The notes beneath the pieces were generated by a model. That model was not told where the DNA came from, did not search any database, and saw only the letters and a list, made by a program, of their open reading frames with translations. This document shows positions 1,085 to 49,156 of a DNA stretch of 64,000 nt, in pieces. Source of the stretch: Ostrea edulis (lineage: Eukaryota); the NCBI RefSeq assembly GCF_947568905.1, contig NC_079167.1:91512001-91576000 (forward strand), read 5' to 3'. The position numbers and the translations under genes are program-made. How positions within the stretch are numbered: position 1 is the first letter of the stretch; each line of letters starts with the position of its first letter.

Positions 1085-1192
1085 AGAATGTTTTTGTGAT
1101 TGTTGCAGGTCATTATGATGAGAATGTTTTTGTGATTGTTGCAGGTCATTATGATGAGAATGTTTTTGTGATTGTTGTAGGTCATTATGATG
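1085..1192 (+). repeat. 3 x 36-bp tandem copy of splice acceptor plus exon start
   Basis: agaatgtttttgtgattgttg(c/t)ag|gtcattatgatg at 1085, 1121 and 1157. Confidence 0.95.
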
Positions 1193-1322
1193 GGAATGCG
1201 ATGCCTAGTGCTGGTGCTCTCCCCTTTGTTCAGTCTTTTTTGTGTAATTTTAACAATCCGTGCCATGCTACTGCAAGTGCAGACGAAACTCCAGGAACCA
1301 TTGGCAGTTTCGATCAGTCCTT
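1181..1322 (+). CDS. ABCA1: ABCA exon (HYDGNAMPSAGALPFVQSFLCNFNNPC)
   Basis: AG at 1179-80, GTAAGT at 1323; conserved AMPSAG motif; 142 bp. Confidence 0.92.
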
Positions 1323-1437
1323 GTAAGTTTGGTTTTAAACATTTTGGGAAAATAGAGGTTAGGGCTGTTCAGAATTTAAATATACTACAATTCTTTTTAT
1401 TACATGGACATAATTCTTTGTTTTATATCATTTTTAG

Positions 1438-1568
1438 TTTAACTAGAGTTGTGAAAGATCTCTCGAAAGTGTTGCAGGACAACTCGGTGATAACTTTAGC
1501 TCATGTCCTGCGAGATTTTGAGTTTTATACAGGAGTCTTAAACAACATAGGCAGTGGAAACTCTACGG
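1438..1568 (+). CDS. ABCA1: ABCA exon, ECD1 (LTRVVKDLSKVLQDN)
   Basis: AG/GT boundaries, phase 2 to 1, open frame. Confidence 0.8.
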
Positions 1569-1933
1569 GTACTGTTTGACAGTTTATTTACAAATTTCTT
1601 GAAACAGAGAACTTGCTGATGTTAATATTGCTGTGTGATATCTCAATGAGCTTGGACAGTATACATTCACCTTCAGTGAAGTCTGTTTCTCCCATTTTGG
1701 AAATGTAAATCTTCCGCTAAAACATTTTCCCTTTTGATAGATGGATTCACCATGTCTTTAGGTCTGTTCATTGATATTTGTTCCACAGATCTGTACAATT
1801 GTTCATTTTTTTCCTTTAAATTTTGGATATAATCATTGAAAGCTGTTCACATGATATTCATCAGTCATTTTTATTTGAAGGGGGGTAACTACTTTTGTGT
1901 CACCTTGGAAGCACAGACACATAAGAATCACTT

Positions 1934-1935
<2 letters not shown>

Positions 1936-2008
<73 letters not shown>

Positions 2009-2018
2009 CTCTCTCTCT
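1936..2018 (+). repeat. (CT)n microsatellite
   Basis: Direct reading. Confidence 0.97.
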
Positions 2019-2112
2019 GTGTTACACTTTAGAACATTTTAAAAAACTTTTTTTCTCTACATTTAGGCTTGATTGGATGATTAAGTATTAACCTGACCAT
2101 TGTGTTTTGTAG

Positions 2113-2231
2113 GGAATATTACCTTAGGAAGTTTAGTGGTGAATCCTCAGCAAATTATCTCCGGTTTCCAAGACAATGACACCAGGCAAGCCATCATTGA
2201 TCTTTTTGGAACTTCCATCAATATTAACATG
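2113..2231 (+). CDS. ABCA1: ABCA exon, ECD1 (NITLGSLVVNPQQ)
   Basis: ttttgtag acceptor, GTAAGA donor, phase 1 to 0. Confidence 0.8.
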
Positions 2232-2827
2232 GTAAGAAATCAGGGTCTGTTTCACTCCATATAATTTGGGTTTTTGTTAGGTCTTTCAAATGAAGTTGAG
2301 GATATGATTAATATGATGCATAGACGGATAACAACAATCGCTTTTATGAATGACATTTGAAATTCTGAATGTGGTTAGGGACTCTACAAATCATCAAGGG
2401 ACATAACTACGGAGTGCATGACTCCATAGTTTACTCACTTTCACCAGCAGTATATGCCTGGACTTTAATGAGAAGGGACATCGGTGGTTTATGGAAACAA
2501 TATTTGTGTCTTGAAATCATTTTATCTAGTTTTGAATAAAACAAACATTTTTAATGATGTGAAAATCACTTGTTTCTCACAATTCTAAATATCTGCAACA
2601 TGTTTTTCTTAGATGCAGACTTTGTACTTTTGTTTGGGAGACTTGCATTTTGAATGCTCCCTTATATCTTTTTTTAACTTTGTTCCAAAGATACATGTAT
2701 GTAAAAACATGATTGTTTATGCTGTCATAAACTGAAATGCTCAAATGTATTATTTTGAAAAGAATAGAAGTATTTCAATTCATAGTGTTGACAGAATATT
2801 GAGTTTTTCATTCATGTTAATCTTCAG

Positions 2828-3124
2828 TTGAATTCGACACTTGTAAACGACATCTTGGAAGACGTAGGGGTCTGTAGAGTGCCCAATCTGAATTCGACAG
2901 GCGTAAACCCATCCACAAACCTGACCCTACTACAAGCCCAATTCCGGAATGTTATCTGTGACCAGGATCAAATTTCTCAGATTTTTAATTTTACCTCGGA
3001 ACCTGCTCGGGATCTGGTATCCAACCAGCTGTGTAATTTAACAAATCCGGAAAGTATTGGTAACGTGATTCAGTTACTGGAAGAACTACAGAGGACGGTG
3101 AATGCCACAACTCTTTTTGAAGAG
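2828..3124 (+). CDS. ABCA1: ABCA exon, ECD1 (LNSTLVNDILEDVGVC)
   Basis: ttcag acceptor, GTGAGC donor, 297 bp open frame. Confidence 0.85.
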
Positions 3125-3334
3125 GTGAGCAAGATTTGAATTTAGAAACAATTTTACATGAAATGTATTGGATATTTGCAAAGGTTCTGTGCTACATAAT
3201 TCAAGGGAGTTCTTTATTGCCTGTCAATATTAAATGTCCTATGTATGAATACATTGCAATATCTGTGAGTTACACTTGCATTCCTGAATATGAATATTTG
3301 TGACAGTTATATTTAGTAATTTTCTTTATTTCAG

Positions 3335-4380: not shown

Positions 4381-4735
4381 ATTAGGGCCCCGCATGAAAT
4401 GTGGGAAGCCCTATAGTAATCACGTCCGTCTGTCCGTCAACACTTTCTTTGTGACACGATAACTCAAACAGTTTTTATCGTACAGTTTTCAAATTTTGTA
4501 CAGAAATAATGTACAATAAGAGGAAGATGCCTATAGATTTTGGGGTCATTTCACTTTTTCTGTCTGTCTGGCATGATCTTTGTTATTATGAACACTTTCT
4601 TTGTGACACAATAACTCAAGAGTTTTTATTGTACAGTTTTCAAATTATGTACAGAAATACTTTACAATAAGAGGAAGACACCTATAGATTTTGGGGTCAT
4701 GTCACTTTGTCTGTCTGTTTGAATGTCATCATCTT
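4381..4735 (+). mobile_element. Partial Helentron-like element with two ~170-bp internal repeats
   Basis: 5' hairpin-like segment, gtccgtctgtccgtc, duplicated aacactttctttgtgacac...gattttggggtcat. Confidence 0.5.
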
Positions 4736-6894: not shown

Positions 6895-6924
6895 GTACAT
6901 GCATAAACCAAGACACAGAAGGGG

Positions 6925-8226: not shown

Positions 8227-8395
8227 CCTGTTTTACTTCAATCTGGAGGTACATGTAACATTAACTTGTTTTACTTCAATCTGGAGGTACATGTAACATT
8301 AACCTGTTTTACTTCAATCTGGAGGTACATGTAACATTAACTTGTTTTACTTCAATCTGGAGGTACAATCTGGAGGTACATGTAACATTAAATTG
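8227..8395 (+). repeat. About 4.5 x 37-38-bp repeat abutting acceptor 8404
   Basis: ttgttttacttcaatctggaggtacatgtaacattaa. Confidence 0.88.
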
Positions 8396-8404
8396 TTTTT
8401 GCAG

Positions 8405-8498
8405 TGCTTCAACCTGAACAAGTTTAAAGGTTACAAAAATCAGAGGCAGATGATCAATGATGGAGTGAAAAAGATTGAAGATTTGGATTTTTGGGCAG
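8405..8498 (+). CDS. ABCA1: ABCA exon (CFNLNKFKGY...DFWA)
   Basis: Resembles ABCA1 CVNLNK...FWAG; AG/GTAAGA. Confidence 0.9.
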
Positions 8499-8535
8499 GT
8501 AAGAAATAAAAGTCCTCAACTTGGTTAATTGCTTA

Positions 8536-10751: not shown

Positions 10752-10928
10752 ATACTGGCGACCTGGTCCCAGGTCTACTGCTGGAATTGACACAAAATAC
10801 ATCACTTACGGCTTTGCTTACATTCAGGACATGATTGACCATGCGATCATTAATATCCAGACTAACAAGCAGGTGAACATCGGAGTGGAAACACAGCAGT
10901 TCCCCTATCCATGTTATACCAGAGACAG
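10752..10928 (+). CDS. ABCA1: ABCA exon (YWRPGPR...QQFPYPCYTRD)
   Basis: Conserved GF.YIQD and PYPCY motifs; 177 bp. Confidence 0.95.
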
Positions 10929-12443
10929 GTAAACACCTGAGTATTACCTTTATCCATGTTATACCAGAGACAGATAAACACCTGAGTATTACCTTTATCT
11001 GTGTTATACCAGAGACAGGTAAACACCTGAGTATTACCTTTATCTGTGTTATACCAGAGACAGGTAAACACCTGAGTATTACCTTTATCTGTGTTATACC
11101 AGAGACAGGTAAACACCTGAGTATTACCTTTATCTGTGTTATACCAGAGACAGGTAAACACCTGAGTATTACCTTTATCTGTGTTATACCAGAGACAGGT
11201 AAACACCTGAGTATTACCTTTATCTGTGTTATACCAGAGACAGGTAAACACCTGAGTATTACCTTTATCTGTCTTATACCAGAGACAGGTAAACACCTGA
11301 GTATTACCTTTATCTGTCTTATACCAGAGACAGGTAAACACCTAAGTATTTCCTTTATCTGTCTTATACCAGAGACAGGTAAACACCTGAGTATTACCTT
11401 TATCTGTCTTATACCAGAGACAGGTAAACACCCGAGTATTACCTTTATCTGTCTTATACCAGAGACAGGTAAACACCCGAGTATTACCTTTATCTGTCTT
11501 ATACCAGAGACAGGTAAACACCCGAGTATTACCTTTATCTGTGTTATACCAGAGACAGGTAAACACCCGAATATTACCTTTATCTGTCTTATACCAGAGA
11601 CAGGTAAACACCCGAATATTACCTTTATCTGTCTTATACCAGAGACAGGTAAACACCTGAATATTACCTTTATCTGTCTTATACCAGAGACAGGTAAACA
11701 CCTGAGTATTACCTTTATCTGTCTTATACCAGAGACAGGTAAACACCTGAGTATTACCTTTATCCGTGTTATACCAGAGACAGGTAAACACCTGAGTATT
11801 ACCTTTATCCGTGTTATACCAGAGACAGGTAAACACCTGAGTATTACCTTTATCCGTGTTATACCAGAGACAGGTAAACACCTGAGTATTACCTTTATCC
11901 GTGTTATACCAGAGACAGGTAAACACCTGAGTATTACCTTTATCCGTGTTATACCAGAGACAGGTAAACACCTGAATATTACCTTTATCCGTGTTATACC
12001 AGAGACAGGTAAACACCTGAGTATTACCTTTATCCGTGTTATACCAGAGACAGGTAAACACCTGAGTATTACCTTTATCCGTGTTATACCAGAGACAGGT
12101 AAACACCTGAATATTACCTTTATCCGTGTTATACCAGAGACAGGTAAACACCTGAGTATTACCTTTATCCGTGTTATACCAGAGACAGGTAAACACCTGA
12201 GTATTACCTTTATCCGTGTTATACCAGAGACAGGTAAACACCTGAGTATTACCTTTATCCGTGTTATACCAGAGACAGGTAAACACCTGAGTATTACCTT
12301 TATCTGTGTTATACCAGAGACAGGTAAACACCTGAGTATTACCTTTATCCGTGTTATACCAGAGACAGGTAAACACCTGAGTATTACCTTTATCTGTGTT
12401 ATACCAGAGACAGGTAAACACCTGAGTCTTACCTTTATCTGTG
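10906..12443 (+). repeat. About 34 x 45-bp array containing 23 nt of exon end plus donor CAG|GTAAAC
   Basis: tatc(c/t)(a/g)t(g/c)ttataccagagacag|gtaaacacctgagtattacctt. Confidence 0.97.
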
Positions 12444-17555: not shown

Positions 17556-17687
17556 GTCTATTTTGACTGGTTTATTTGAGCCCACAGATGGAACAGCTTA
17601 CATATATGGCTATGACATTCGATCCGAGATGGACAACATTAGGAAGGGTCTGGGGATGTGTCCTCAGCATAATGTCCTGTTCGATGG
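17556..17687 (+). CDS. ABCA1: ABCA exon, NBD1 Q-loop
   Basis: [12 protein letters not shown]; 132 bp. Confidence 0.96.
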
Positions 17688-17990
17688 GTAAGACTCGAAT
17701 ATTGCCCTCAATGTAAGGTCCTGTTCGATGGGTAAGACTCGAATATTGCCCTCAATGTAAGGTCCTGTTTGATGGGTAAGACTCGAATATTGCCCTCAAT
17801 GTAAGGTCCTGTTCGATGGGTAAGACTCGAATATTGCCCTCAATGTAAGGTCCTGTTCGATGGGTAAGACTCGAATATTGCCCTCAATGTAAGGTCCTGT
17901 TCGATGGGTAAGACTCGAATATTGCCCTCAATGTAAGGTCCTGTTCGATGTATCATCCCCAATGTAATGTCCTTTTGAATGGTAAGACTT
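17674..17990 (+). repeat. 6 x 44-bp array (plus partial copies) containing exon end plus donor GG|GTAAGA
   Basis: gtcctgttcgatgg|gtaagactcgaatattgccctcaatgtaag; donors at 17688, 17732, 17776, 17820, 17864 and 17908. Confidence 0.96.
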
Positions 17991-21942: not shown

Positions 21943-21974
21943 GTACAGAATTAAGCAGTTCAGTTCGTGAAAAT

Positions 21975-22125
21975 ATAGTTCCCTCGTTGTGATCGGTGTG
22001 TGGATCCCAGGTAATGGTAACAGATTATAGTTCCCTCGTTGTGATCAGTGTGTGGATCCCAGGTAATGGTAACAGATTATAGCTCCCTCGTTGTGATCAG
22101 TGTGTGGATCCCAGGTAATGGTAAC
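21975..22125 (+). repeat. 3 x 52-bp repeat carrying donor-like gatcccag|gtaatg
   Basis: Resembles the adjacent authentic gattccag|gtacag at 21942. Confidence 0.85.
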
Positions 22126-22182
22126 TGATTTCTCAGTGAATTAGAAATAAAGTGAACATCATTTTAGACCATTTATTTTTAG

Positions 22183-23677: not shown

Positions 23678-23762
23678 GTGTTCTTGAAAGTTGCTGAGCA
23701 GGCAGCAGATGCTGAAATGCCAGATGAAGTGCGGCGAAGTAGACTGGAGGACCTGACTGATA
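23678..23762 (+). CDS. ABCA1: ABCA exon (VFLKVAEQ)
   Basis: Resembles ABCA1 IFLKVAEE; GTAAGT donor. Confidence 0.9.
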
Positions 23763-24935
23763 GTAAGTGTGGTATTAAAGAGGATAGTGTGATATTAAAG
23801 GGAATAGTAAGTGTGGTATTAAAGATAGTAAGTGTGATAATAAAGAGGATAGTAAGTGTGGTATTAAAGATAGTAAGTGTGATAATAAAGAGGATAGTAA
23901 GTGTGGTATTAAAGGGGATAGTAAGTGTGATAATAAAGAGGATAGTAAGTGTGGTACTAAAGAGAAAAGTAAGTGTGGTATTAAAGATAGTAAGTGTGAT
24001 AATAAAGGGGATAGTAAGTGTGGTATTAAAGGGGATAGTAAGTGTGATAATAAAGGGGATAGTAAGTGTGTTATTAAAGGGGATAGTAAGTGTGATAATA
24101 GAGGGGATAGTAAGTGTGGTACTAAAGAGAAAAGTAAGTGTGGTATTAAAGATAGTAAGTGTGATAATAAAGGGGATAGTAAGTGTGGTATTAAAGGGGA
24201 TAGTAAGTGTGATAATAAAGGGGATAGTAAGTGTGATATTAAAGATAGTAAGTGTGATAATAAAGGGGATAGTAAGTGTGGTATTAAAGATAGTAAGTGT
24301 GATAATAAAGAGGATAGTAAGTGTGGTATTAAAGATAGTAAGTGTGGTATTAAAGATAGTAAGTGTGGTATTAAAGATAGTAAGTGTGATAATAAAGGGG
24401 ATAGTAAGTGTGATATTAAAGATAGTAAGTGTGATAATAAAGGGGATAGTAAGTGTGGTATTAAAGATAGTAAGTGTGATAATAAAGAGGATAGTAAGTG
24501 TGGTATTAAAGGGGATAGTAAGTGTGATAATAAAGAGGATAGTAAGTGTGGTACTAAAGAGAAAAGTAAGTGTGGTATTAAAGATAGTAAGTGTGATAAT
24601 AAAGGGAATAGTAAGTGTGGTACTAAAGAGGATAGTAAGTGTGGTATTAAAGATAGTAAGTGTGATAATAAAGAGGATAGTGGTATTAAAGAAGATAGTA
24701 GGTGTGGTAATAAAGATAGTAAGTGTGATAATAAAGAGGATAGTGGTATTAAAGAAGATGGTAGGTGTGGTAATAAAGATAGTAAGTGTGATAATAAAGA
24801 GGATAGTGGTATTAAAGAAGATAGTAAGTGTGGTAATAAAGAGGATAGTGTGGTAATAAAGAGGATAATGTGGTATTAAAGAAGATAGTAGGTGTGGTAA
24901 TAAAGAGGATAGTACATGTAAGTGTGGTTTTAAAG
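23759..24935 (+). repeat. About 40-45 x 21-24-bp array containing donor GATA|GTAAGT
   Basis: gatagtaagtgtg(gta/ata)(t/a)taaag(ag/gg); the first copy is the authentic donor. Confidence 0.96.
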
Positions 24936-25677: not shown

Positions 25678-25733
25678 AAGGTGTCATTTTACCTGTTTAC
25701 TAAGGTGCCATTTTTTACCTGTTTACTAAGGTG
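25678..25733 (+). repeat. Duplicated acceptor, 26-bp spacing
   Basis: ttttacctgtttactaag|gtg twice (AG ending at 25704 and 25730). Confidence 0.85.
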
Positions 25734-26347: not shown

Positions 26348-26490
26348 GTTATCATGCCCGCATTGTTTGTGCTGCTGGCCATGGTATTTTCGGAGATCAG
26401 ACCACCAGATAATGAACAGCCACCTTTGGAACTTCAGCCCTGGAGATACGTCCCTAAGAAGGGAGACAAACATCTTTATGTCTTTTACAG
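26348..26490 (+). CDS. ABCA1: ABCA exon, TMD2 first helix (VIMPALFVLLAM...LELQPW)
   Basis: Resembles ABCA1 IVLPAVFV...LELQPW. Confidence 0.93.
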
Positions 26491-26548
26491 GTATCAAACT
26501 AACAAGGGAGACAAACATTTTTATGTCTTCTTCAGGCATCAAAAACGC
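26459..26548 (+). repeat. 2 x 45-bp duplication of exon end plus donor; second copy GT changed to GC
   Basis: aagggagacaaacatctttatgtcttttacag|gtatcaaa versus aagggagacaaacatttttatgtcttcttcag|gcatcaaa. Confidence 0.88.
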
Positions 26549-26968
26549 AGGGGAGAGATAGCACTTTGAATTTCATCAGTGGGGGAAAAAAACAATGATT
26601 GTTGATTAATTTTCAATTTGTTGCACATTAACATTTTACATACTGACCCATTCTCCCACAGACAGTAAGGATCATTGTTCATAAAAAAACAGTGTAATGA
26701 AATGATTTTTGCACAGATACTCAACAAGTTTGGTCACAATATTTCCATGAGCTAGAAGTGCAGGCTCATTTATGTATATCCAGAATTTCAGATCTGCCAC
26801 AAGGACTATATTAATCCATGTACATGTCATGTAATCTAGCCAGAACTTTGCTGATTGAACATATTTTTAGATACTAATATTATAATGGAATATGAACTGT
26901 AGATAGAGAGCATGTATTATTGCCTATATTTATTCAGTGAAATGAAAAGTTAATATATTTCTCTACAG

Positions 26969-30762: not shown

Positions 30763-30878
30763 ATCAACTACCTGATGCCCTGCTTGATATGCATTATAAT
30801 ATTTGTGGCCTTTGACAACCAGTCCTACGTGGGGCCAAACAACTGGCCATGTTTAGTGTTGTTAATGTTTCTGTACGG
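30763..30878 (+). CDS. ABCA1: ABCA exon, TMD2 (INYLMPC...LMFLYG)
   Basis: 116 bp; AG/GTGAGT. Confidence 0.93.
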
Positions 30879-31006
30879 GTGAGTACTATTACAGTGACTG
30901 GCCATGTTTAGCGTTGTTAATGTTTCTGTACGGGTGAGTACTATCACAGTGACTGGCCATGTTTAGTGTTGTTAATGTTTCTGTACGGGTGAGTACTATC
31001 ACAGTG
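30842..31006 (+). repeat. 3 x 55-bp array containing 37 nt of exon end plus donor GG|GTGAGT
   Basis: actggccatgtttagtgttgttaatgtttctgtacgg|gtgagtacta at 30842, 30897 and 30952. Confidence 0.96.
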
Positions 31007-31072
31007 GTGTATCATCAAATGATTTTATTTCACTTAAAAACAAAGAAAGTTTTATTGTTTTAATAGGAGATG

Positions 31073-34000
31073 TGTAGGAGAGATGGGTGATGCTAGGAGT
31101 AACTGTATGATATTGATAATGTGTGTATATGTAGGAGAGATGGGTGATGCTAGGAGTAACTGTTGTATAACATTGATAATGTGTGTAGGAGAGGTGGGTG
31201 ATGCTAGGAGTAACTGTATAACATTGATAATGTGTGTATGTGTAGGAGAGATGGGTGATGCTAGGAGTAACTGTATAACATTGATAATGTGTGTATATGT
31301 AGGAGAGGTGGGTGATGCTAGGAGTAACTGTATAACATTGATAATGTGTGTATATGTAGGAGAGGTGGGTGATGCTAGGAGTAACTGTTGTATAACATTG
31401 ATAATGTGTGTATATGTAGGAGAGATGGGTGATGCTAGGAGTAACTGTATAACATTGATAATGTGTGTATATGTAGGAGAGATGGGTGATGCTAGGAGTA
31501 ACTGTATAACATTGATAATGTGTGTATATGTAGGAGAGGTGGGTGATGCTAGGAGTAACTGTTGTATAACATTGATAATGTGTGTATATGTAGGAGAGAT
31601 GGGTGATGCTAGGAGTAACTGTATAACATTGATAATGTGTGTATATGTAGGAGAGATGGGTGATGCTAGAAGTAACTGTATAATGTTGATAATGTGTGTA
31701 TGTGTAGGAGAGATGGGTGATGCTAGGAGTAATTGTATAACATTGATAATGTGTGTATGTGTAGGAGAGATGGGTGATGCTAGGAGTAATTGTATAACAT
31801 TGATAATGTGTGTATATGTAGGAGAGATGGGTGATGCTAGGAGTAATTGTATAACATTGATAATGTGTGTAGGAGAGGTGGGTGATGCTAGGAGTAATTG
31901 TATAACATTGATAATGTGTGTATGTGTAGGAGAGGTGGGTGATGCTAGGAGTAATTGTATAACATTGATAATGTGTGTATATGTAGGAGAGGTGGGTGAT
32001 GCTAGGAGTAATTGTATGACATTGATAATGTGTGTATATGTAGGAGAGATGGGTGATGCTAGGAGTAACTGTATAACATTGATAATGTGTGTAGGAGAGA
32101 TGGGTGATGCTAGGAGTAACTGTTGTATAACATTGATAATGTGTGTAGGAGAGGTGGGTGATGCTAGGAGTAATTGTATAACATTGATAATGTGTGTATA
32201 TGTAGGAGAGATGGGTGATGCTAGGAGTAACTGTATAACATTGATAATGTGTGTATGTGTAGGAGAGATGGGTGATGCTAGGAGTAACTGTATAACATTG
32301 ATAATGTGTGTATGTGTAGGAGAGATGGGTGATGCTAGGAGTAATTGTATAACATTGATAATGTGTGTATATGTAGGAGAGATGGGTGATGCTAGGAGTA
32401 ACTGTTGTATAACATTGATAATGTGTGTATATGTAGGAGAGGTGGGTGATGCTAGGAGTAACTGTTGTATAACATTGATAATGTGTGTATATGTAGGAGA
32501 GATGGGTGATGCTAGGAGTAATTGTATAACATTGATAATGTGTGTAGGAGAGATGGGCGCTGTCTAGGAGTAATTGTATAACATTGATAATGTGTGTATG
32601 TGTAGGAGAGATGGGTGATGCTAGGAGTAATTGTATAACATTGATAATGTGTGTAGGAGAGATGGGTGATGCTAGGAGTAATTGTATAACATTGATAATG
32701 TGTGTATGTGTAGGAGAGATGGGTGATGCTAGGAGTAATTGTATAACATTGATAATGTGTGTATGTGTAGGAGAGATGGGTGATGCTAGGAGTAATTGTA
32801 TAACATTGATAATGTGTGTATGTGTAGGAGAGATGGGTGATGCTAGGAGTAACTGTATAACATTGATAATGTGTGTAGGAGAGGTGGGTGATGCTAGGAG
32901 TAACTGTATAACATTGATAATGTGTGTATATGTAGGAGAGATGGGTGATGCTAGGAGTAATTGTATAACATTGATAATGTGTGTATGTGTAGGAGAGATG
33001 GGTGATGCTAGGAGTAACTGTATAACATTGATAATGTGTGTAGGAGAGATGGGTGATGCTAGGAGTAACTGTTGTATAACATTGATAATGTGTGTAGGAG
33101 AGGTGGGTGATGCTAGGAGTAACTGTATAACATTGATAATGTGTGTATATGTAGGAGAGATGGGTGATGCTAGGAGTAATTGTATAACATTGATAATGTG
33201 TGTATATGTAGGAGAGGTGGGTGATGCTAGGAGTAATTGTATAACATTGATAATGTGTGTATATGTAGGAGAGGTGGGTGATGCTAGGAGTAATTGTATA
33301 ACATTGATAATGTGTGTATATGTAGGAGAGGTGGGTGATGCTAGGAGTAACTGTTGTATAACATTGATAATGTGTGTATATGTAGGAGAGATGGGTGATG
33401 CTAGGAGTAACTGTATAACATTGATAATGTGTGTAGGAGAGATGGGTGATGCTAGGAGTAACTGTTGTATAACATTGATAATGTGTGTAGGAGAGGTGGG
33501 TGATGCTAGGAGTAACTGTATAACATTGATAATGTGTGTATATGTAGGAGAGGTGGGTGATGCTAGGAGTAACTGTATAACATTGATAATGTGTGTATGT
33601 GTAGGAGAGGTGGGTGATGCTAGGAGTAACTGTTGTATAACATTGATAATGTGTGTATATGTAGGAGAGGTGGGTGATGCTAGGAGTAACTGTATAACAT
33701 TGATAATGTGTGTATATGTAGGAGAGGTGGGTGATGCTAGGAGTAACTGTTGTATAACATTGATAATGTGTGTATATGTAGGAGAGGTGGGTGATGCTAG
33801 GAGTAACTGTATAACATTGATAATGTGTGTATATGTAGGAGAGATGGGTGATGCTAGGAGTAACTGTTGTATAACATTGATAATGTGTGTAGGAGAGGTG
33901 GGTGATGCTAGGAGTAACTGTATGATATTGATAATGTGTGTATATGTAGGAGAGATGGGTGATGCTAGGAGTAATTGTATAACATTGATAATGTGTGTAT

Positions 34001-34460
34001 ATGTAGGAGAGGTGGGTGATGCTAGGAGTAACTGTATAACATTGATAATGTGTGTATATGTAGGAGAGATGGGTGATGCTAGGAGTAATTGTATAACATT
34101 GATAATGTGTGTATATGTAGGAGAGATGGGTGATGCTAGGAGTAATTGTATAACATTGATAATGTGTGTATATGTAGGAGAGATGGGTGATGCTAGGAGT
34201 AATTGTATAACATTGATAATGTGTCTACATGTAGGAGAGATGGGTGATGCTAGGAGTAATTGTATAACATTGATAATGTGTGTATATGTAGGAGAGATGG
34301 GTGATGCTAGGAGTAATTGTATGACATTGATAATGTGTGTATATGTAGGAGAGATGGGTGATGCTAGGAGTAACTGTTGTATAACATTGATAATGTGTGT
34401 AGGAGAGGTGGGTGATGCTAGGAGTAACTGTATAACATTGATAATGTGTCTACATGTAGG
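31073..34460 (+). repeat. About 60 x 51-60-bp array whose last copy supplies the authentic acceptor (atgtag|g)
   Basis: gtaggagag(a/g)tgggtgatgctaggagtaa(c/t)tgtataacattgataatgtgtgtatat. Confidence 0.96.
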
Positions 34461-34601
34461 TGGGCCATGATTCCATTGATGTATCCATTCTCCCGCCTGT
34501 TCAGTATTCCCAGCACCTCCATGGTGGTTCTACAGTCTGTTAATGTCTTCCTGGGCACCACTGCCACTCTGGCCACTTATGTCATTGAGTTCCTGCAGGC
34601 T
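34460..34601 (+). CDS. ABCA1: ABCA exon, TMD2 (WAMIPLMYPFS); 3' end lost in N-gap
   Basis: Resembles ABCA1 GWSITPLMYP; runs into Ns at 34602. Confidence 0.92.
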
Positions 34602-34730
34602 NNNNNNNNNNNNNNNNNNNNNNNNNNNNNNNNNNNNNNNNNNNNNNNNNNNNNNNNNNNNNNNNNNNNNNNNNNNNNNNNNNNNNNNNNNNNNNNNNNN
34701 NNNNNNNNNNNNNNNNNNNNNNNNNNNNNN
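34602..34730. other. Assembly gap (129 N)
   Basis: Direct reading. Confidence 0.99.
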
Positions 34731-34788
34731 AAAAATTATGCCAAGAAATGACTTCATGTACAAGTGTTTAACTTTGCCTGTTTGTCAG

Positions 34789-40034: not shown

Positions 40035-42295
40035 GTATGTCACATACAGTGTAAGTCTGTCACATACAGTGTAAGTCTGTCACATACAGTGTAAGTCTGT
40101 CACATACAGTGTAAGTCTGTCACATACAGTGTAAGTCTGTCACATACCGTGTAAGTCTGTCACATACCGTGTAAGTCTGTCACATACAGTGTAAGCATGT
40201 CACATACCGTGTAAGTCTCACATACAGTGTAAGTCTGTCACATACCGTGTAAGTCTGTCACAGACAGTGTAAGTCTGTCACATACCGTGTAAGTCTGTCA
40301 CATACAGTGTAAGTCTGTCACATACAGTGCAAGTCTGTCACATACAGTGTAAGTCTGTCACATACAGTGTAAGTCTCACATACAGTGTAAGTCTGTCACA
40401 TACAGTGTAAGTCTGTCACAGACAGTGTAAGTCTGTCACATACCGTGTAAGTCTGTCACATACAGTGTAAGTCTGTCACATACAGTGCAAGTCTGTCACA
40501 TACAGTGTAAGTCTGTCACATACAGTGTAAGTCTCACATACAGTGTAAGTCTGTCACATACAGTGTAAGTCTGTCACATACAGTGTAAGCATGTCACATA
40601 CCGTGTAAGTCTGTCACATAGAGTGTAAGCATGTCACATACAGTGTAAGTCTATCACATACAGTGTAAGTATGTCACATATAGTGTAAGTCTCACATACA
40701 GTGTAAGCATTTCACATATAGTGTAAGTCTCACATACAGTGTAAGTCTGTCACATACAGTGTAAGTATGTCACATACAGTGTAAGTCTGTCACATAGAGT
40801 GTAAGCATGTCACAGACAGTGTAAGCATGTCCCATACAGTGTAAGCATGTCACATACAGTGTAAGTCTGTCACATACAGTGTAAGCATGTCACATACAGT
40901 GTAAGTCTGTCACATACAGTGTAAGCATGTCCCATACAGTGTAAGTCTCACATACAGTGTAAGTCTGTCACATACAGTGTAAGTCTGTCACATACAGTGT
41001 AAGTCTGTCACATACAGTGTAAGTCTGTCACATACAGTGTAAGCATGTCACATACAGTGTAAGTCTGTCACATACAGTGTAAGTATGTCACATATAGTGT
41101 AAGTCTCGCATACAGTGTAAGTCTGTCACATAGAGTGTAAGCATGTCACATACAGTGTAAGTCTGTCACATACAGTGTAAGTCTGTCACATACAGTGTAA
41201 GTCTGTCACATACAGTGTAAGCATGTCACATATAGTGTAAGTATCACATACAGTGTAAGTCTATCACATACAGTGTAAGTCTGTCACATACAGTGTAAGT
41301 CTATCACATACAGTGTAAGTCTGTCACATACAGTGTAAGTCTGTCACATACCATGTAAGCATGTCACAGACAGTGTAAGCATGTCACAGACAGTGTAAGT
41401 CTGTCACATACAGTGTAAGTCTGTCACATACCATGTAAGCATGTCACAGACAGTGTAAGCATGTCACAGACAGTGTAAGTCTATCACATATAGTGTAAGT
41501 CTGTCACATACAGTGTAAGTCTGTCACATACAGTGTAAGTATGTCACATATAGTGTAAGTCTCGCATACAGTGTAAGCATGTCACATATAGTGTAAGTCT
41601 CACATACAGTGTAAGTCTGTCACATACAGTGTAAGTCTGTCACATACAGTGTAAGTCTCACATACAGTGTAAGTCTGTCACATACAGTGTAAGTCTCACA
41701 TACAGTGTAAGCATGTCACATACAGTGTAAGTCTGTCACATACAGTGTAAGTCTGTCACATACAGTGTAAGTCTGTCACATACAGTGTAAGCATGTCCCA
41801 TACAGTGTAAGTCTGTCACATACAGTGTAAGTCTGTCACATACAGTGTAAGCATGTCCCATACAGTGTAAGTCTGTCACATACCATGTAAGTCTGTCACA
41901 TACAGTGTAAGTCTGTCACATACAGTGTAAGCATGTCTCATAGTGTAAGTCTGTCACATAGAGTGTAAGTATGTCACATACCATGTAAGTCTGTCACATA
42001 CAGTGTAAGCATGTCTCATACAGTGTAAGTCTGTCACATACAGTGTAAGTCTATCACATACAGTGTAAGTCTGTCACATACAGTGTAAGTCTGTCACATA
42101 CAGTGTAAGCATGTCTCATACAGTGTAAGTCTGTCACATACAGTGTAAGTCTGTCACATACAGTGTAAGTATGTCACATACCATGTAAGTCTATCACATA
42201 CAGTGTAAGTCTGTCACATACAGTGTAAGTCTATCACATACAGTGTAAGTCTATCACATACAGTGTAAGCATGTCTCATACAGTGTAAGTATGTC
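40032..42295 (+). repeat. About 110 x 18-20-bp array starting at the donor; most units contain GTAAGT
   Basis: cagtgtaagtctgtcacata; authentic site is cag|gtatgtcacata. Confidence 0.96.
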
Positions 42296-43180: not shown

Positions 43181-43284
43181 GATGAGCCCACCACAGGAAT
43201 GGACCCTAGGGCACGAAGATTCTTATGGAACTGTATCAAGAACATCATTAAAGATGGGCGCTCAGTCATCCTCACCTCTCACAG
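43181..43284 (+). CDS. ABCA1: ABCA exon, NBD2 Walker B
   Basis: [16 protein letters not shown]...SVILTSH; 104 bp. Confidence 0.97.
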
Positions 43285-44620
43285 GTAATCTAGTTAATGT
43301 ATGGGCACTCAGTCATCCTCACCTCACACAGGTAATCTAGTTAATGTATGGGCGCTCAGTCATCCTCACCTCACAGGTAATCTAGTTAATGTATGGGCAC
43401 TCAGTCATCCTCACCTCACAGGTAATCTAGTTAATGTATGGGCACTCAGTCATCCTCACCTCACAGGTAATCTAGTTAATGTATGGGCACTCAGTCATCC
43501 TCACCTCTCACAGGTAATCTAGTTAATGTATGGGTGGTCAGTCATCCTCACCTCACAGGTAATCTAGTTAATGTATGGGCACTCAGTCATCCTCACCTCA
43601 CAGGTAATCTAGTTAATGTATGGGTGGTCAGTCATCCTCACCTCTCACAGGTAATCTAGTTAATGTATGGGTGTTCAGTCATCCTCACCTCACAGGTAAT
43701 CTAGTTAATGTATGGGCACTTAGTCATCCTCACCTCTCAGGTAATCTAGTTAATGTATGGGCACTCAGTCATCCTCACCTCACAGGTAATCTAGTTAATA
43801 TATGGGTGGTCAGTCATCCTCACCTCTCACAGGTAATCTAGTTAATGTATGGGTGTTCAGTCATCCTCACCTCACAGGTAATCTAGTTAATGTATGGGCA
43901 CTTAGTCATCCTCACCTCTCAGGTAATCTAGTTAATGTATGGGCACTCAGTCATCCTCACCTCACAGGTAATCTAGTTAATGTATGGGCACTTAGTCATC
44001 CTCACCTCTCAGGTAATCTAGTTAATGTATGGGCACTCAGTCATCCTCACCTCACAGGTTATCTAGTTAATGTATGGGCACTCAGTCATCCTCACCTCTC
44101 ACAGGTTATCTAGTTAATGTATGGGCGCTCAGTCATCCTCACCTCACAGGTAATCTAGTTAATGTATGGGTGTTCAGTCATCCTCACCTCACAGGTAATC
44201 TAGTTAATGTATGGGCACTCAGTCATCCTCACCTCACAGGTAATCTAGTTAATGTATGGGCACTCAGTCATCCTCACCTCACAAGTAATCTAGTTAATGT
44301 ATGGGCGCTCAGTCATCCTCACCTCACAGGTAATCTAGTTAATGTATGGGCACTCAGTCATCCTCACCTCACAGGTAATCTAGTTAATGTATGGGCACTC
44401 AGTCATCCTCACCTCTCAGGTAATCTAGTTAATGTATGGGCACTCAGTCATCCTCACCTCACAGGTAATCTAGTTAATGTATGGGTGTTCAGTCATCCTC
44501 ACCTCTCACAGGTAATCTAGTTAATGTATGGTCGGTCAGTCATCCTCACCTCTCAGGTAATCTAGTTAATGTATGGGCACTTAGTCATCCTCACCACTCA
44601 CAGGTAATCTAGTTAATGTA
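43254..44620 (+). repeat. About 30 x 45/47-bp array containing 31 nt of exon end plus donor CAG|GTAATC
   Basis: atgggcactcagtcatcctcacctc(tc)acag|gtaatctagttaatgt. Confidence 0.97.
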
Positions 44621-44819
44621 CAGATATGTAACAAACGTGATGATGAATATTGTTTGACAAAATATGAAAGAATAATTCTGTAGATTCCTTATTTTACACG
44701 CGTACTTAATATGGTGGAATGGCTCGTAAACTTCAAATCGCGTGAACATGAATCCGTGTGTCGTCTGTTAATCAAGAGTTCTTACAAGTATTTTAACAAT
44801 AGAAAAATGAAAGTGGGTA

Positions 44820-45634
44820 ATTATACCCCCCGAACGAAGTTCTGGGGGTGTATATAGGAATCACTGTCTGTCCGTCCGTCCGTCTGTCGGTATCCAGATT
44901 CGTGTCCGGGCCATAACTTCTTTGTTCTTTGACATAGACCTACCATATTTGACACACAGGTGGATCACCATGAGATGATGTGTCGGGTACCTTCATGACC
45001 TGTATATGACCTTGACCTCAAGGTCAAAATTAAAGGTTTTTTACAATGTATTCGTGTCTGGGCCATAACTTCTATGTTCTTTGATATAGGCATACCATAT
45101 TTGACACATGAGTGTATCACCATGAGACGATATGTCATGTGCCTTCATGACCTCCATATGACCCTGACCTCAAGGTCAAAATTGAAGGTTTTTACAATGG
45201 ATTCGTGTCAGGGCCATGACTTCTTTGTTCTTTGACATAGGCATACCATATTTGACACATGAGTGTATCACCATGAGACGATGTGTCAGGTACCTTCATG
45301 ACCCCTATATGACCTTGAACTTTGACCTCAAGGTCAAAATTTATTATAGGGTTTTGACATAGTCATACCATAAGACATGGGTGTATCACCATGAGACTAT
45401 GTGTCATGTACATTCATGACCTCTTTATGACCTTGACCTTTGATCTCAAGGTCAAAATTATAGGTTTATACCATGGATTTGTGTTCAGACTATATCTTCC
45501 ATTTTCTTCTACAAAGGCATACTATATTTTTACACTCAGGAAAGCGGTAATTTATGCCTATTAACAACACCCTTTGGGAGATTGGGGTAAGCGGGGGATA
45601 TTCTTAGTGAGCATTGCTCACAGTACCTCTTGTT
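44820..45634 (+). mobile_element. Non-autonomous Helentron-type element with ~145-bp internal repeats
   Basis: Sub-TIR tatacccccc / gggggata, gtcc microsatellite, repeats carrying gaccttgacctcaaggtca, 3' hairpin gtgagcattgctcac. Confidence 0.8.
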
Positions 45635-45839
45635 TTATTTTGCAAGTGATGCCTCACGTAAAATTATGTGATAATAAATTCCTCGCATATATTTTGGAAT
45701 CTACAGTATGCAATCTGTATTGTTAAACAGCACTTCGAGTTTATCAACAATGGTGAAGGTTTATTGTTTGCTTTTCCAACTTCTTCCACAGTTTTGTAAT
45801 TTAGTTTGAAAAAACGGAATAAGGTTTAGTAAATCTGAT

Positions 45840-46355
45840 GCGAACAGTGTGAAAACATTAAATGAATGTTCGTTTTGTGATAACAATATGTGAAAACATT
45901 AAATGAATAATTGTTTTGCGATGACAGCTCGACAGTATGTGAAAACATAAATAAATATTTGTTTTGCGATAACAGTATGTGAAAACATTAAATGAATATT
46001 TGTTTTGCGATAACAGTATGTGAAAACATTAAATGAATATTTGTTTTGCGATAACAGTATGTGAAAACATTAAATGAATATTTGTTTTGTGATAACAGTA
46101 TGTGAAAACATTAAATGAATATTTGTTTTGCGATAACAGTATGTGAAAACATTAAATGAATATTTGTTTTGCGATAACAGTATGTGAAAACATTAAATGA
46201 ATACATGTATTTGTTTTGCGATAACAGTATGTGAAAACATTAAATGAATGTTTGTTTTGCAATGACAGTATGTGAAAACATTAAATGAATATTTGTTTTG
46301 TGATGACAGTATGTGAAAACATTAAATGAATGTTTGTTTTGCAATGACAGTATGG
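45840..46355 (+). repeat. About 12 x 41-bp array whose last copy supplies the authentic acceptor (acag|tatg)
   Basis: tgaaaacattaaatgaatatttgttttgcgataacag|tatg. Confidence 0.96.
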
Positions 46356-46443
46356 AAGAATGCGAGGCTCTCTGTGGCAGGCTGGCCATAATGGTGAATG
46401 GAACATTCCGTTGTCTTGGTAGCACTCAGCATCTCAAAAACAG
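46351..46443 (+). CDS. ABCA1: ABCA exon (SMEECEALC...QHLKN)
   Basis: 93 bp, conserved motif. Confidence 0.96.
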
Positions 46444-46590
46444 GTTAATACTTTATTCAGTTATTTGTATTTTTATCAATCTTATATTTTGAAATTGTAA
46501 TCGATAATAATCTTAGGAAGTAACATGTGTATTTCATGTGATAATTTAAAGTAAAATGTAAATTAAACAATGTTCTGTGTGACACTTTAA

Positions 46591-47107
46591 AGGGACTGAT
46601 TCACGATTTTCCCCCAAATATTTTTTTACTTTTAATGATCAAAATCTACTATCTAATGTGTTGAGAAGATTTCACATAAAAATTAAGGTTATACATGTAC
46701 ATTATCTTAGAAGCTCATTTTAGAAAGTTAATTATTTGTTTTGTAAACAAAGATTGCAGTATGTTATTGTTTACGACATTTTCAAAAGAAATGGATATCG
46801 ATCCAAGTTCATTATATTTTTCACATTTCAAGCATTTTTGGGGTAAAATGTGTCATCTAAAACTTAAAATTTGTGACTATGCAAAATTAAGATGCTATAC
46901 TTTACAAAATCAATATTTCACTTGTTTGTATACATAAAAAGACTTGAGTCTTTGTTTACATAACACAGATTTAGGGCTAAAATATTGCTTTTATTTTTGC
47001 ATTCAGAAGCTCAAAAATTTGGCTGTCAACATTAGATGAGTTATATTTTTAATGTTTAACAACAAAAATGAAAAAATATTTTCATCAAAAATTGTGAACC
47101 AGTCCCT
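46591..47107. mobile_element. TTAA-flanked MITE with purine termini (Kolobok-like), 517 bp
   Basis: TIRs agggactgattcacgatttt / aaaattgtgaaccagtccct; TTAA at 46587-90 and 47108-11. Confidence 0.83.
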
Positions 47108-47141
47108 TTAAATCATAACGTCAATCCAACCATTTCAATAG

Positions 47142-47382
47142 ATTTGGTGATGGCTACACCATAATAGTCCGGGTAGCCGGTGAGAATCCAGACATGGCTG
47201 GTGTTGAGGAATTCATCACTACCACATTCCGTGGATCGGAACTATTGGAGGCCCACCATAACATGTTGCAGTACCAGCTGAAGTCCCGGGTCAAACTGTC
47301 CTACATATTTGGACAGCTAGAAAAGGTCAAGTCCAGACTCAATATTGAGGACTACTCAGTCTCGCAGACTACACTGGACCAG
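47142..47382 (+). CDS. ABCA1: ABCA exon, regulatory domain 2 (FGDGYT...[12 protein letters not shown])
   Basis: Conserved motifs. Confidence 0.96.
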
Positions 47383-47513
47383 GTAGGCTGAACAAGGACT
47401 AAATATCATGTCCAAATTGTACTCATGTGTTTATGTTGGTCAGTTTTGGTTTGTCTACGTACATGTATGTACGTATTTTTAAACTAGCAGTGCAAATTGT
47501 GTTATTTTTGTAG

Positions 47514-47604
47514 GTGTTTATAAACTTTGCCAAAGATCAAACAGATTTGTTGGATGATGAAATTCCTGTTAAATCAGAAAAAAAGAAATCTAGTATCAGA
47601 AAAG
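47514..47604 (+). CDS. ABCA1: ABCA exon (VFINFAKDQ)
   Basis: Matches ABCA1 VFVNFAKDQ. Confidence 0.94.
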
Positions 47605-47966
47605 GTTTGTTGTTTTACTATTGCTAGATATTTTGTGGTTCAGAATGCTTCTTCACTGTAAAGATTCAGTTAAAGATCACTATTCTCCATCTCATTACGG
47701 TTTTATTATGAAGATGAAGTAAAGGTACTAGTCTCATCAGATTTGATTTTCTATGCAAGGTAGGGTAGGAGTGACATAAATTATGCTTCTGTTAACTTCA
47801 TGTACTCTTAGTAAAGCTATTGCAAAGAAATTTTTACCTACAATTAAATATTAACACTTATTGCATCGTTATTTTCTCTATAGTAGTGAAACACAGGTTC
47901 ATTATGTAAGTAAATAAAGCAATGGTTGAAATTGTGCCGGTGTACAGTGATGTAATCTTTGTGTAG

Positions 47967-48098
47967 GTAATGGAATATTTCCTATTGGTGGGACCTCGGG
48001 ATACACAGACATAGACAATGATAGTATTGCGGGCTCCAGTCTAGGAGGATCATTTTTAGAGCTCCGACAACCAAACAAAAGATTCGGAGGGAACATAG
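47967..48098 (+). CDS. ABCA1: Probable symmetric C-terminal tail exon (GNGIFPIGGTSGYTDIDND)
   Basis: ctttgtgtag acceptor, AG|GTATGT donor, 132 bp, phase 1 to 1, open frame; no homology recognised. Confidence 0.62.
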
Positions 48099-48174
48099 GT
48101 ATGTCTAACATTGTAAGAGCAGAAATTGAAGCCTAATGCATCGGTGTAGTTACAAACAAGGAAACCACTAACAA

Positions 48175-48750
48175 AGATATCTTCACATTAGTGTTATTGC
48201 TGGGAGAGGGCGACATCTTCACATTAGTGTTATTGCTGGGAGAGGGCGACATCTTCACATTAGTGTTATTGCTGGGAGAGGGCGACATCTTCACATTAGT
48301 GTTATTGCTGAGAGAGGGCGACATCTTCACATTAGTGTTATTGCTGGGAGAGGGCGACATCTTCACATTAGTGTTATTGCTGGGAGAGGGCGACATCTTC
48401 ACATTAGTGTTATTGCTGAGAGAGGGCGACATCTTCACATTAGTGTTATTGCTGGGAGAGGGCGACATCTTCACATTAGTGTTATTGCTGAGAGAGGGCG
48501 ACATCTTCACATTAGTGTTATTGCTGGGAGAGGGCGACATCTTCACATTAGTGTTATTGCTGGGAGAGGGCGACATCTTCACATTAGTGTTATTGCTGGG
48601 AGAGGGCGACATCTTCACATTAGTGTTATTGCTGGGAGAGGGCGACATCTTCACATTAGTGTTATTGCTGGGAGAGGGCGACATCTTCACATTAGTGTTA
48701 TTGCTGGGAGAGGGCGACATCTTCACATTAGTGTTATTGCTGGGAGAGAG
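48175..48750 (+). repeat. 16 x 36-bp intronic minisatellite
   Basis: gacatcttcacattagtgttattgctgggagagggc. Confidence 0.96.
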
Positions 48751-49028
48751 CATACATAGGCTATGCCCAACCCTTTTGAGTTTCTCAATAAAATATGTTT
48801 AAATTAAAATTAGTGTTATTGCACATACACATGTATACACATTCGATATAACTTTATCAACTGTAAGCTTGTTGGATGTAACAGACATCAAATAGACTGC
48901 CTTTTTCTTTTAGTTTTTGAGAAAATAGCTTTTTATCACATTTTCACTTTCAGATGTCAAAAAGGAATTTTAGAACAGCTCTTTTGGGGGTTTTCTTACT
49001 TTAGAGATTGTCATATTTTCACTTTCAG

Positions 49029-49156
49029 ATTCCAGTAATTTGGCTTACACAGACGAGGAAAGCCTCACAGGAAGCACGGTGGACTTGATTCGCCCCAGTA
49101 GTGCTAGAAGTAGTACCCGGAGCTCTAACACAATGTCCAATGTCCAAATTTTCTGA
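49029..49156 (+). CDS. ABCA1: Terminal coding exon (DSSNLAYTDEE...NVQIF*)
   Basis: ctttcag acceptor, phase 1, TGA at 49154-56, followed by AT-rich UTR-like sequence. Confidence 0.72.

What the first reader, a model, noticed from the sequence alone, without database searches (positions are those of the whole stretch)
1085..49030. Gene-wide pattern: splice junctions themselves are the seeds of tandem arrays
About 15 junctions of this one gene are tandemly amplified with unrelated unit sequences of 20-75 bp and 2 to about 110 copies. Donor side: 10019, 10928, 17687, 21942, 23762, 26490, 30878, 40034, 43284. Acceptor side: 1181, 8405 (degenerate), 25731, 34460, 46351, 49029. In every case the authentic site is the exon-side terminal copy and the array grows only into the intron, leaving the CDS intact. 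Three introns (23763-25730, 30879-34459, 43285-46350) carry both a donor array and an acceptor duplication. Roughly 10 kb of intron is decoy splice sites. All of this is read directly from the sequence. Inference: either a mutational process targets exon/intron boundaries (polymerase pausing, R-loop or nucleosome-edge slippage, or repair templated on splicing intermediates), or these duplications are simply tolerated where exon-internal ones are purged. The spliceosome must still select one site among dozens of identical copies.
Basis: partly seen in the sequence, partly recalled or inferred. Interest (0 to 1): 0.9.

Follow-up and report, generated by a model that had tools for sequence, protein, structure and literature searches.

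The report
Splice-junction minisatellites in an oyster gene
In a flat-oyster ABCA1-like gene, 13 exon-intron borders have been copied head to tail into the introns, up to about 114 times; most of this pattern is what random duplication in short introns plus selection on the coding sequence would leave, so it looks like a tolerated by-product.

Summary
The window carries exons 4-50 of Ostrea edulis ABCA1-like. Its spliced translation is 100% identical to XP_056020266, and all 15 junction coordinates are right.

- **Arrays:** Thirteen junctions carry a tandem array whose unit contains or abuts the junction, about 11 kb in total. The claim at 21942 is weak. The one at 49029 is a single 23-nt copy 75 nt upstream, not an array.
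- **Decoys:** They keep intact GT/AG (32, 26 and 38 donors identical to the real one in three arrays). Nearly all would give a frameshift or a premature stop.
- **Gap:** The assembly gap hides three codons and one donor. The frame fits on both sides.
- **Chance:** If duplications fall uniformly in array-collapsed introns and exon-internal ones are purged, 3-6 of 23 arrays should touch a junction, or 10 under the shortest plausible ancestral introns. Eleven do.
- **Controls:** Eight unselected bivalve homologues show 23 of 75 against 12-16 expected.

So geometry and tolerance explain most of the pattern, and a 1.4-2-fold excess remains unexplained.

Human F7 and CBS have VNTRs of the same kind. 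The scan has already noted this pattern in many other windows of this genome.

The parts
1181..49156 (+). Exons 4-50 (47 exons) of the Ostrea edulis ABCA1-like gene; stop codon at 49154-49156
   Evidence: Spliced translation is 100% identical to P0156. Pfam ABC2_membrane_3 and ABC_tran hits on exons.
1085..1198 (+). Acceptor array, 36 nt x3.2, spanning acceptor 1181 (18 exon nt). Two upstream decoy acceptors (TTGCAG) would add 12 or 24 in-frame residues.
8229..8416 (+). 38 nt x3.7 array derived from the acceptor-8405 region. The copies have lost the AG through two small deletions but keep about 12 exon-like nt.
   Evidence: 0 of 2000 shuffles reached the score
10008..10195 (+). Donor array, 26 nt x6.7, at donor 10019. 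Copies carry 12 exon nt; four CAGGTCAAG decoys.
10912..12443 (+). Donor array, 45 nt x34, spanning donor 10928 (17 exon nt). 32 decoys identical to the real 9-mer; the nearest copy is GT>AT.
17670..17950 (+). Donor array, 44 nt x6.4, spanning donor 17687 (18 exon nt); 5 identical decoys
21974..22130 (+). 52 nt x3 intronic array, 31 nt after donor 21942. Only a degenerate resemblance to the junction; not counted.
   Evidence: P=0.02
23759..24914 (+). Donor array, 24 nt x51, spanning donor 23762 (4 exon nt); 38 ATAGTAAGT decoys
25678..25733 (+). Acceptor duplication, 26 nt x2.2, at acceptor 25731
26454..26556 (+). Donor duplication, 45 nt x2, spanning donor 26490 (37 exon nt); the copy has GT>GC
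30842..31006 (+). Donor array, 55 nt x3, spanning donor 30878 (37 exon nt); 2 identical decoys
31073..34460 (+). Acceptor array, 57 nt x60, ending on the first base of exon 34460-34601. 45 decoy acceptors score within the range of real acceptors.
34602..34730 (.). Assembly gap. It hides three codons (aa 1895-1897) and the donor of the exon that starts at 34460.
40035..42295 (+). 20 nt x114 array starting at intron base +1 of donor 40034. It contains no exon sequence; each unit carries GTAAGT.
43254..44620 (+). Donor array, 45 nt x30, spanning donor 43284 (31 exon nt that encode the H-loop region). 26 identical decoys; the units are AG|GT sites.
45848..46354 (+). Acceptor array, 41 nt x12, spanning acceptor 46351 (4 exon nt)
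48933..49030 (+). Two 23-nt copies of the acceptor-49029 region, 75 nt apart; not a tandem array

Best explanation
These are intronic minisatellites of the F7/CBS kind: the first (donor side) or last (acceptor side) unit contains the exon-intron border.

Inferred origin: tandem duplications of 20-60 nt arise and expand at a high rate in introns of oysters and scallops. Duplications inside exons are removed by selection. Those inside introns, or straddling a border, leave the mRNA unchanged as long as the exon-proximal site is used, so they persist. The ancestral introns were short (about 100-500 nt) relative to the unit, so a third or more of surviving arrays must include a border.

Inferred splicing: the exon-proximal copy is chosen, as in the upstream-first donor selection shown for F7 and in exon definition. 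Use of a decoy gives a frameshift or a premature stop, which nonsense-mediated decay would remove.

Shown here: the arrays, their junction content, the intact decoys, the intact CDS, the short orthologous introns and the geometric expectation.

Not shown: the splicing behaviour and the mutation process.
For: - Junction content of the units and correct exon model.
- The repeated exon ends encode conserved residues, and intron positions are conserved across oysters and scallops, so the arrays derive from the junctions.
- Orthologous introns are short in C. virginica and S. cucullata (for example 1968 vs 91/161 nt, 2362 vs 176/282, 3066 vs 466/124). The arrays are therefore lineage-specific expansions of short introns.
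- Geometric null: 3.3-5.8 junction arrays expected among 23, or 10.0 with the shortest of three species' intron lengths, against 11 observed.
- The observed share tracks the predicted share: 0.02>0.07, 0.14>0.12, 0.25>0.41, 0.52>0.69, 0.90>1.0.
- Young 2-3-copy duplications in the control loci: 9 of 27 against 6.3 expected, P=0.12.
- GT/AG in decoys is no more mutated than other columns (32/33, 25/27, 38/42 intact), so there is no sign of selection for or against decoys.
- Decoy use gives a frameshift or premature stop in almost all cases.
- The only annotated isoform difference is an unrelated 27-nt micro-exon.
- Experimental precedent for exclusive use of the most upstream of several identical donors: F7 IVS7 (PMC1557585).
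Against: - Junction arrays exceed the null by 1.4-2.2-fold: all 9 loci 34/98 against 21.1 or 15.7 expected (P=0.0004 and 2e-6); 8 unselected control loci 23/75 against 16.4 or 12.4 (P=0.025 and 0.0013).
- One prediction bin is badly off: 0.08 predicted, 0.44 observed.
- The same junction is hit in several lineages somewhat more often than expected: 9 pairs against 5.1, P=0.065.
- No RNA evidence could be obtained for O. edulis (one search found no transcript fragments). Use of the exon-proximal site rests on the NCBI gene model and on coding logic.
Confidence: 0.65

Rival explanations
1. A mutational process really favours exon-intron borders. Examples: slippage between splice-motif microhomologies (CAGGT-like words at the site and at nearby pseudo-sites), or co-transcriptional pausing or R-loops at splice sites. 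Minisatellites would then be born or expand there more often than elsewhere in introns.
For: - A residual 1.4-2.2-fold excess over the geometric null in the window and in eight unselected loci.
- A slight excess of recurrence at the same junction across lineages (9 pairs against 5.1, P=0.065).
- Many arrays start within 0-6 nt of the border.
- Strong positive GC skew in two arrays.
Against: - The excess vanishes under the shortest plausible ancestral introns (P=0.41) and is not significant for young duplications in the controls under the own-intron null.
- A detection bias is expected: the exon half of the first copy is held constant by selection, so junction duplications stay recognisable for longer. 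This was not modelled.
- The GC skew is not consistent among arrays.
- The clam Ruditapes shows 0 of 18.
Confidence: 0.22
2. The arrays are kept because they do something. They might recruit U1 along long introns, serve as recursive splice sites (AG|GT units), or tune expression through unproductive splicing and decay.
For: - 27 of 28 AG|GT units of the 43254 array, and 4 of 4 at 10019, score as possible 3' sites and would regenerate the same donor.
- Decoys keep intact consensus.
- Two in-frame decoy acceptors lie upstream of 1181.
Against: - Units are unrelated in sequence, and the arrays are absent from the orthologous introns of C. virginica and S. cucullata. They turn over quickly between congeners.
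- Splice dinucleotides in the copies are no better conserved than other columns.
- Units of the 10928 array are poor 3' sites.
- No annotated isoform uses a decoy.
Confidence: 0.08
3. The arrays, or their copy numbers, are assembly artefacts.
For: One assembly gap lies in the gene. Long arrays of near-identical units are hard to assemble.
Against: - The arrays have internal variant structure and higher-order periods (182 nt and 117 nt).
- The gap is not inside an array.
- The same kind of array occurs in six other independent bivalve assemblies.
- The CDS across every array junction is exact.
Confidence: 0.03

Closest known systems
Human F7 intron 7 37-bp VNTR (PMC1557585)
   Same: It is a minisatellite whose first unit spans the exon-intron border, so the real donor is followed by identical pseudo-donors. 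Only the most upstream site is used.
   Different: F7 has 5-9 copies at one donor of one gene. Here 13 junctions of one gene are involved, on both the donor and acceptor sides, with up to about 114 copies. Splicing behaviour here is inferred, not measured.
Human CBS 31-bp VNTR at the exon 13/intron 13 border (Lievers 2001, as cited in PMC5188458)
   Same: It is a tandem repeat at an exon-intron border. Copy number is reported to affect enzyme activity.
   Different: It is a single locus. No copy-number or phenotype data exist for the oyster arrays.
Recursive splice sites (ratchet points) of long introns, from my own knowledge of the Drosophila and human literature
   Same: The units of the 43254 and 10019 arrays are pyrimidine-rich ...CAG|GTA sites that would regenerate the donor after splicing.
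   Different: Known ratchet points are single, conserved sites in very long introns. These are young repeated copies, their use is untested, and most other arrays lack the AG|GT form.
Intron gain by tandem duplication of an AGGT-containing exon segment (PMC2891723, PMC4974935)
   Same: A tandem duplication that includes splice-site sequence is silenced by splicing.
   Different: No new intron is made here. All intron positions are old and shared with other oysters and scallops.

Membership tests
Junction-spanning intronic minisatellite (F7 IVS7 / CBS type) | Head-to-tail array of 10-100-nt units lying in an intron | tested here: met
   TRF: units of 20-57 nt, 2-114 copies
Junction-spanning intronic minisatellite (F7 IVS7 / CBS type) | The terminal unit contains the exon-intron border, so the splice site is reiterated | tested here: met
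   Ten arrays carry 3-37 exon nt. Two abut the border (0-1 exon nt). One has lost the AG in its copies.
Junction-spanning intronic minisatellite (F7 IVS7 / CBS type) | The exon-proximal copy is the one used in the mRNA | tested here: inconclusive
   Only the exon-proximal copy gives the annotated and conserved protein. Decoys give a frameshift or premature stop. No RNA data could be reached.
Junction-spanning intronic minisatellite (F7 IVS7 / CBS type) | Copy number varies among individuals (VNTR) | not testable with these tools
   Only one assembly of this species was read
Recursive splice sites | Pyrimidine tract + AG|GT(A/G)AGT that regenerates a donor | tested here: inconclusive
   The 43254 array has 27 of 28 units with a 3' site score at or above the 5th percentile of real acceptors; 10019 has 4 of 4; 10928 has 0 of 32. 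Use is untested.
Intron gain by tandem duplication | A new intron at a position absent from relatives | tested here: not met
   45 of the 46 introns could be matched to a C. virginica intron (one found no match in that comparison) and all 46 to an S. cucullata intron, at the same protein positions
Transposon-derived satellite | Unit derived from a mobile element, unrelated to the host exon | tested here: not met
   The units contain the host exon's conserved coding end, for example the H-loop codons at 43254-43284. Four other arrays with periods of 118-166 nt look element-like and were left out of the test.
ABCA1-like full ABC transporter (host gene) | Two ABC2_membrane_3 and two ABC_tran domains; full-length similarity to ABCA1-like proteins | tested here: met
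   Pfam hits on exons. 100% identity to O. edulis ABCA1-like isoform X2.

The most novel reading that the evidence does not exclude
In pteriomorph bivalves (oysters, scallops), minisatellite birth or expansion is truly biased towards splice junctions, beyond what short introns and selection explain. The cause could be splice-motif microhomology or events coupled to co-transcriptional splicing. These genomes would then hold thousands of natural arrays of identical competing splice sites.
Probability: 0.22. Interest if true: 0.7.

Novelty: new variant of a known kind. Interest (0 to 1): 0.45.

Why it matters
If the exon-proximal site is really chosen among 30-110 identical copies, on the acceptor side as well as the donor side, these genes are natural competition assays for how splice sites are selected. 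That question is still debated, and F7 offers only 5-9 copies at one donor.

The arrays also explain much of why this gene's 46 introns total 41 kb in O. edulis, against 14-18 kb in two other oysters. In the scallop ortholog, arrays account for about 52 kb of 70 kb of intron.

A true junction bias would point to a link between splicing and DNA instability. My data neither show nor exclude such a bias.

Tried and rejected
- **Naive null:** Random placement in present-day introns overstates the effect, so I replaced it with array-collapsed introns and ortholog-based ancestral lengths.
- **O. edulis paralogue as control:** A second protein search found none. I used eight bivalve homologues instead; two further look-ups failed.
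- **Transcript evidence:** A search with aa 600-720 found only three distant fragments.
- **Isoforms:** X1 differs from X2 only by a micro-exon, not by decoy use.
- **Selection against decoys:** Column-wise divergence showed no excess at GT/AG. Tiling lost register in the two most degenerate arrays.
- **Hot junctions across species:** 9 shared pairs against 5.1 expected, not significant.
- **Donor/acceptor asymmetry:** 22 to 12, P=0.12.
- **Literature:** Searches found no paper describing this as a bivalve-wide pattern.
- **Gap:** I did not read its letters from any other copy.
Full report
**What the window holds.** Pfam scans of + strand reading frames gave ABC2_membrane_3 and ABC_tran hits in the order expected for a full ABCA transporter. 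A library search with one exon, followed by a search with a full-length scallop relative, led to Ostrea edulis 'phospholipid-transporting ATPase ABCA1-like isoform X2' (P0156, XP_056020266). I placed the splice junctions by exact matching of the protein to the three forward frames with GT/GC-AG rules. The 47 exons in the window translate to residues 56-1894 and 1898-2441 of P0156 without a single mismatch. The window is therefore O. edulis, and the exon model equals the NCBI model. Its 'exon' 25731-26490 is three exons (25731-25859, 26001-26167, 26348-26490).

**The gap.** Exon 34460-34601 runs in frame up to the first N, and the next exon starts after the AG at 34787-34788. Residues 1895-1897 of the annotated protein, and the donor of that exon, have no readable letters. 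Both flanks end on codon borders, so the frame is consistent with nine hidden exon bases, but continuity cannot be verified here. I did not look those letters up. None of the 15 claims depends on the gap.

**The observation.** TRF finds 30 arrays between 1085 and 49156.
- Ten have a unit that spans a junction, with 3-37 exon bases: A1181, D10019, D10928, D17687, D23762, A25731, D26490, D30878, D43284 and A46351.
- Two abut a junction: A34460 ends on the first exon base, and D40034 starts at intron base +1.
- The 38-nt array before acceptor 8405 matches the junction region, including about 12 exon bases, but its copies have lost the AG (0 of 2000 shuffles reached the score).
- D21942 is only a degenerate resemblance (P=0.02). 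A49029 is one 23-nt copy 75 nt upstream.

Probes of 10 exon + 14 intron bases hit their own intron 1-33 times and all other introns 0-1 times. Junction arrays sum to about 11.2 kb. The repeated exon ends encode conserved residues, such as the H-loop region at 43254-43284, so the arrays derive from the junctions and not the reverse.

**Decoys.** I built a position weight matrix from 143 real donors and 144 real acceptors of three oyster orthologues.
- Donor array 10928 holds 32 decoys identical to the real site, 43284 holds 26, 23762 holds 38, 17687 holds 5 and 30878 holds 2.
- Array 40034 holds 119 donor-like sites, all weaker than the real one.
- Acceptor array 34460 holds 45 sites within the range of real acceptors.

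Use of a decoy gives a frameshift or a stop in nearly all cases. The exceptions are two in-frame acceptors before 1181 and three donor decoys (two in the 23762 array, one in the 40034 array). In the arrays that could be tiled in register, GT or AG is intact in 32/33, 25/27, 38/42, 9/9 and 6/6 copies, and is no more variable than other columns. Only two nearest decoys are disabled (10928 GT>AT, 26490 GT>GC). There is thus no sign of selection to kill decoys, and none to keep them.

**Is it more than chance?** Against random placement in introns, clearly yes. But the right null must allow for geometry. A tandem duplication of length U is tolerated if it lies in an intron or straddles a border, and is purged if it lies inside an exon. 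In an intron of ancestral length R, about 2(U+5) of R+U-1 tolerated positions touch a border.

*Ancestral intron lengths.* The array-bearing introns are short in other oysters: 1940 vs 340/182 nt, 1968 vs 91/161, 3581 vs 743/578, 2362 vs 176/282 and 3066 vs 466/124 (O. edulis vs C. virginica/S. cucullata). The arrays are lineage-specific expansions of short introns.

*The window.* I took arrays with periods of 7-99 nt in fully contained introns.

| Null model | Expected | Observed | P |
|---|---|---|---|
| Array-collapsed or ortholog-based intron lengths | 3.3-5.8 of 23 | 11 | 0.0001-0.014 |
| Shortest of the three species' intron lengths | 10.0 of 23 | 11 | 0.41 |

The window was picked because of the pattern, so these P values are optimistic.

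*Control loci.* I therefore ran the same pipeline on eight loci not chosen for it.

| Locus | Junction arrays / all arrays |
|---|---|
| C. virginica ortholog | 1/2 |
| S. cucullata ortholog | 4/8 |
| S. echinata ortholog | 3/6 |
| S. cucullata paralogue | 1/4 |
| Argopecten irradians ortholog | 9/22 |
| Pinctada | 1/3 |
| Ruditapes | 0/18 |
| Pecten maximus paralogue | 4/12 |
| Together | 23/75, against 16.4 (own-intron null, P=0.025) or 12.4 (gene-wide null, P=0.0013) |

*Across all nine loci.* The observed share follows the predicted share: 0.02>0.07, 0.14>0.12, 0.25>0.41, 0.52>0.69, 0.90>1.0. One bin is off (0.08>0.44). Young duplications of fewer than 3.5 copies in the controls give 9/27 against 6.3 expected (P=0.12). 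Expanded arrays give 12/26 against 8.3 (P=0.056).

*Reading.* Geometry plus purifying selection accounts for roughly half to two thirds of junction arrays. A 1.4-2.2-fold excess remains. It could be real. It could reflect ancestral introns shorter than I assumed. Or it could come from a bias I did not model: the exon half of the first copy cannot decay, so junction duplications stay detectable for longer.

**Recurrence.** In P0156 coordinates, the donor at residue 683.7 carries independent arrays, with different phases and units, in O. edulis, S. cucullata and A. irradians. The acceptor at 54.3 does so in O. edulis, S. echinata and P. maximus. Shared junctions between loci number 9 pairs against 5.1 expected (P=0.065). 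This is suggestive and no more. The two Saccostrea species share none, so turnover is fast.

**How it most likely works.**
- *Shown:* the arrays, their junction content, the intact decoys, the intact CDS, the short orthologous introns and the size of the geometric expectation.
- *Inferred:* frequent minisatellite birth and expansion in introns of these bivalves; selection that removes every variant altering the mRNA, so that arrays can grow only into the intron; choice of the exon-proximal site; and removal of mis-spliced RNA by nonsense-mediated decay.

The choice rule has experimental support in man. In F7, where the first 37-bp unit spans exon 7/intron 7, only the most upstream of 5-9 identical donors is used, although all are functional (PMC1557585). 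A 31-bp VNTR lies at the CBS exon 13/intron 13 border (PMC5188458). For acceptor arrays the upstream decoys are met first, so exon definition must be invoked. This is the least secure step. It may be why donor-side arrays outnumber acceptor-side ones 22 to 12 (P=0.12).

**Rivals.**
- A junction-targeted mutation process fits the residual excess but is not required by it.
- A selected function (U1 recruitment or recursive splicing at AG|GT units) has some support: 27 of 28 units of the 43254 array score as possible 3' sites that would regenerate the donor. It is opposed by the unrelated units, the rapid turnover and the lack of extra conservation of splice dinucleotides.
- Assembly error is unlikely, given the higher-order variant structure and the same pattern in six other assemblies.

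**Earlier notes of this scan.** The same pattern is reported in many other windows of this genome. Two follow-ups reached the same reading of tolerated by-products of the F7/CBS kind. These are unchecked notes. I tested the claims on my own data.

**Verdict.** This is a real and dense instance of a known kind of repeat. It is extended here to both junction sides, to 13 junctions of one gene, to more than 100 copies, and to oysters and scallops generally. It is mostly explained by tolerance and geometry. Whether a true junction bias exists remains open.

Noticed in passing
window 14872-14898: A 27-nt micro-exon (GIPLLQINK) is used in isoform X1 (P0309) and skipped in X2. It is the only difference between the two annotated isoforms.
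   Followed up: yes
window 22391/22392 and 26167/26168: Two GC-AG introns: the donors are GC instead of GT.
   Followed up: partly
window 1109 and 1145: Two decoy acceptors upstream of 1181 have a better consensus (TTGCAG) than the real one (TTGTAG). They are in frame without a stop and would add 12 or 24 residues.
   Followed up: partly
L005 (Argopecten irradians ABCA1-like, 1001-78879): The scallop ortholog has 70 kb of intron that collapses to about 18.5 kb once arrays are removed. Arrays reach 368 copies, and nine of 22 touch a junction.
   Followed up: partly
window 359-948, 4439-4718, 22638-23255, 44897-45459: Four long-period (118-166 nt) arrays of low copy number. They look like internal repeats of mobile elements and not local duplications.
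   Followed up: no
window 52887-53291 (+): A 134-aa open reading frame with a FLYWCH zinc-finger domain (E=3e-8), downstream of the ABCA gene.
   Followed up: no
window 59378-61570 (-): A 730-aa open reading frame without introns and with no Pfam family above threshold.
   Followed up: partly
window 23759-24914 and 31073-34460: Two arrays have a strong excess of G over C on the coding strand. Window-level GC skew in the 2-kb windows covering them is 0.47-0.75, and the 24-nt unit has no C at all.
   Followed up: no
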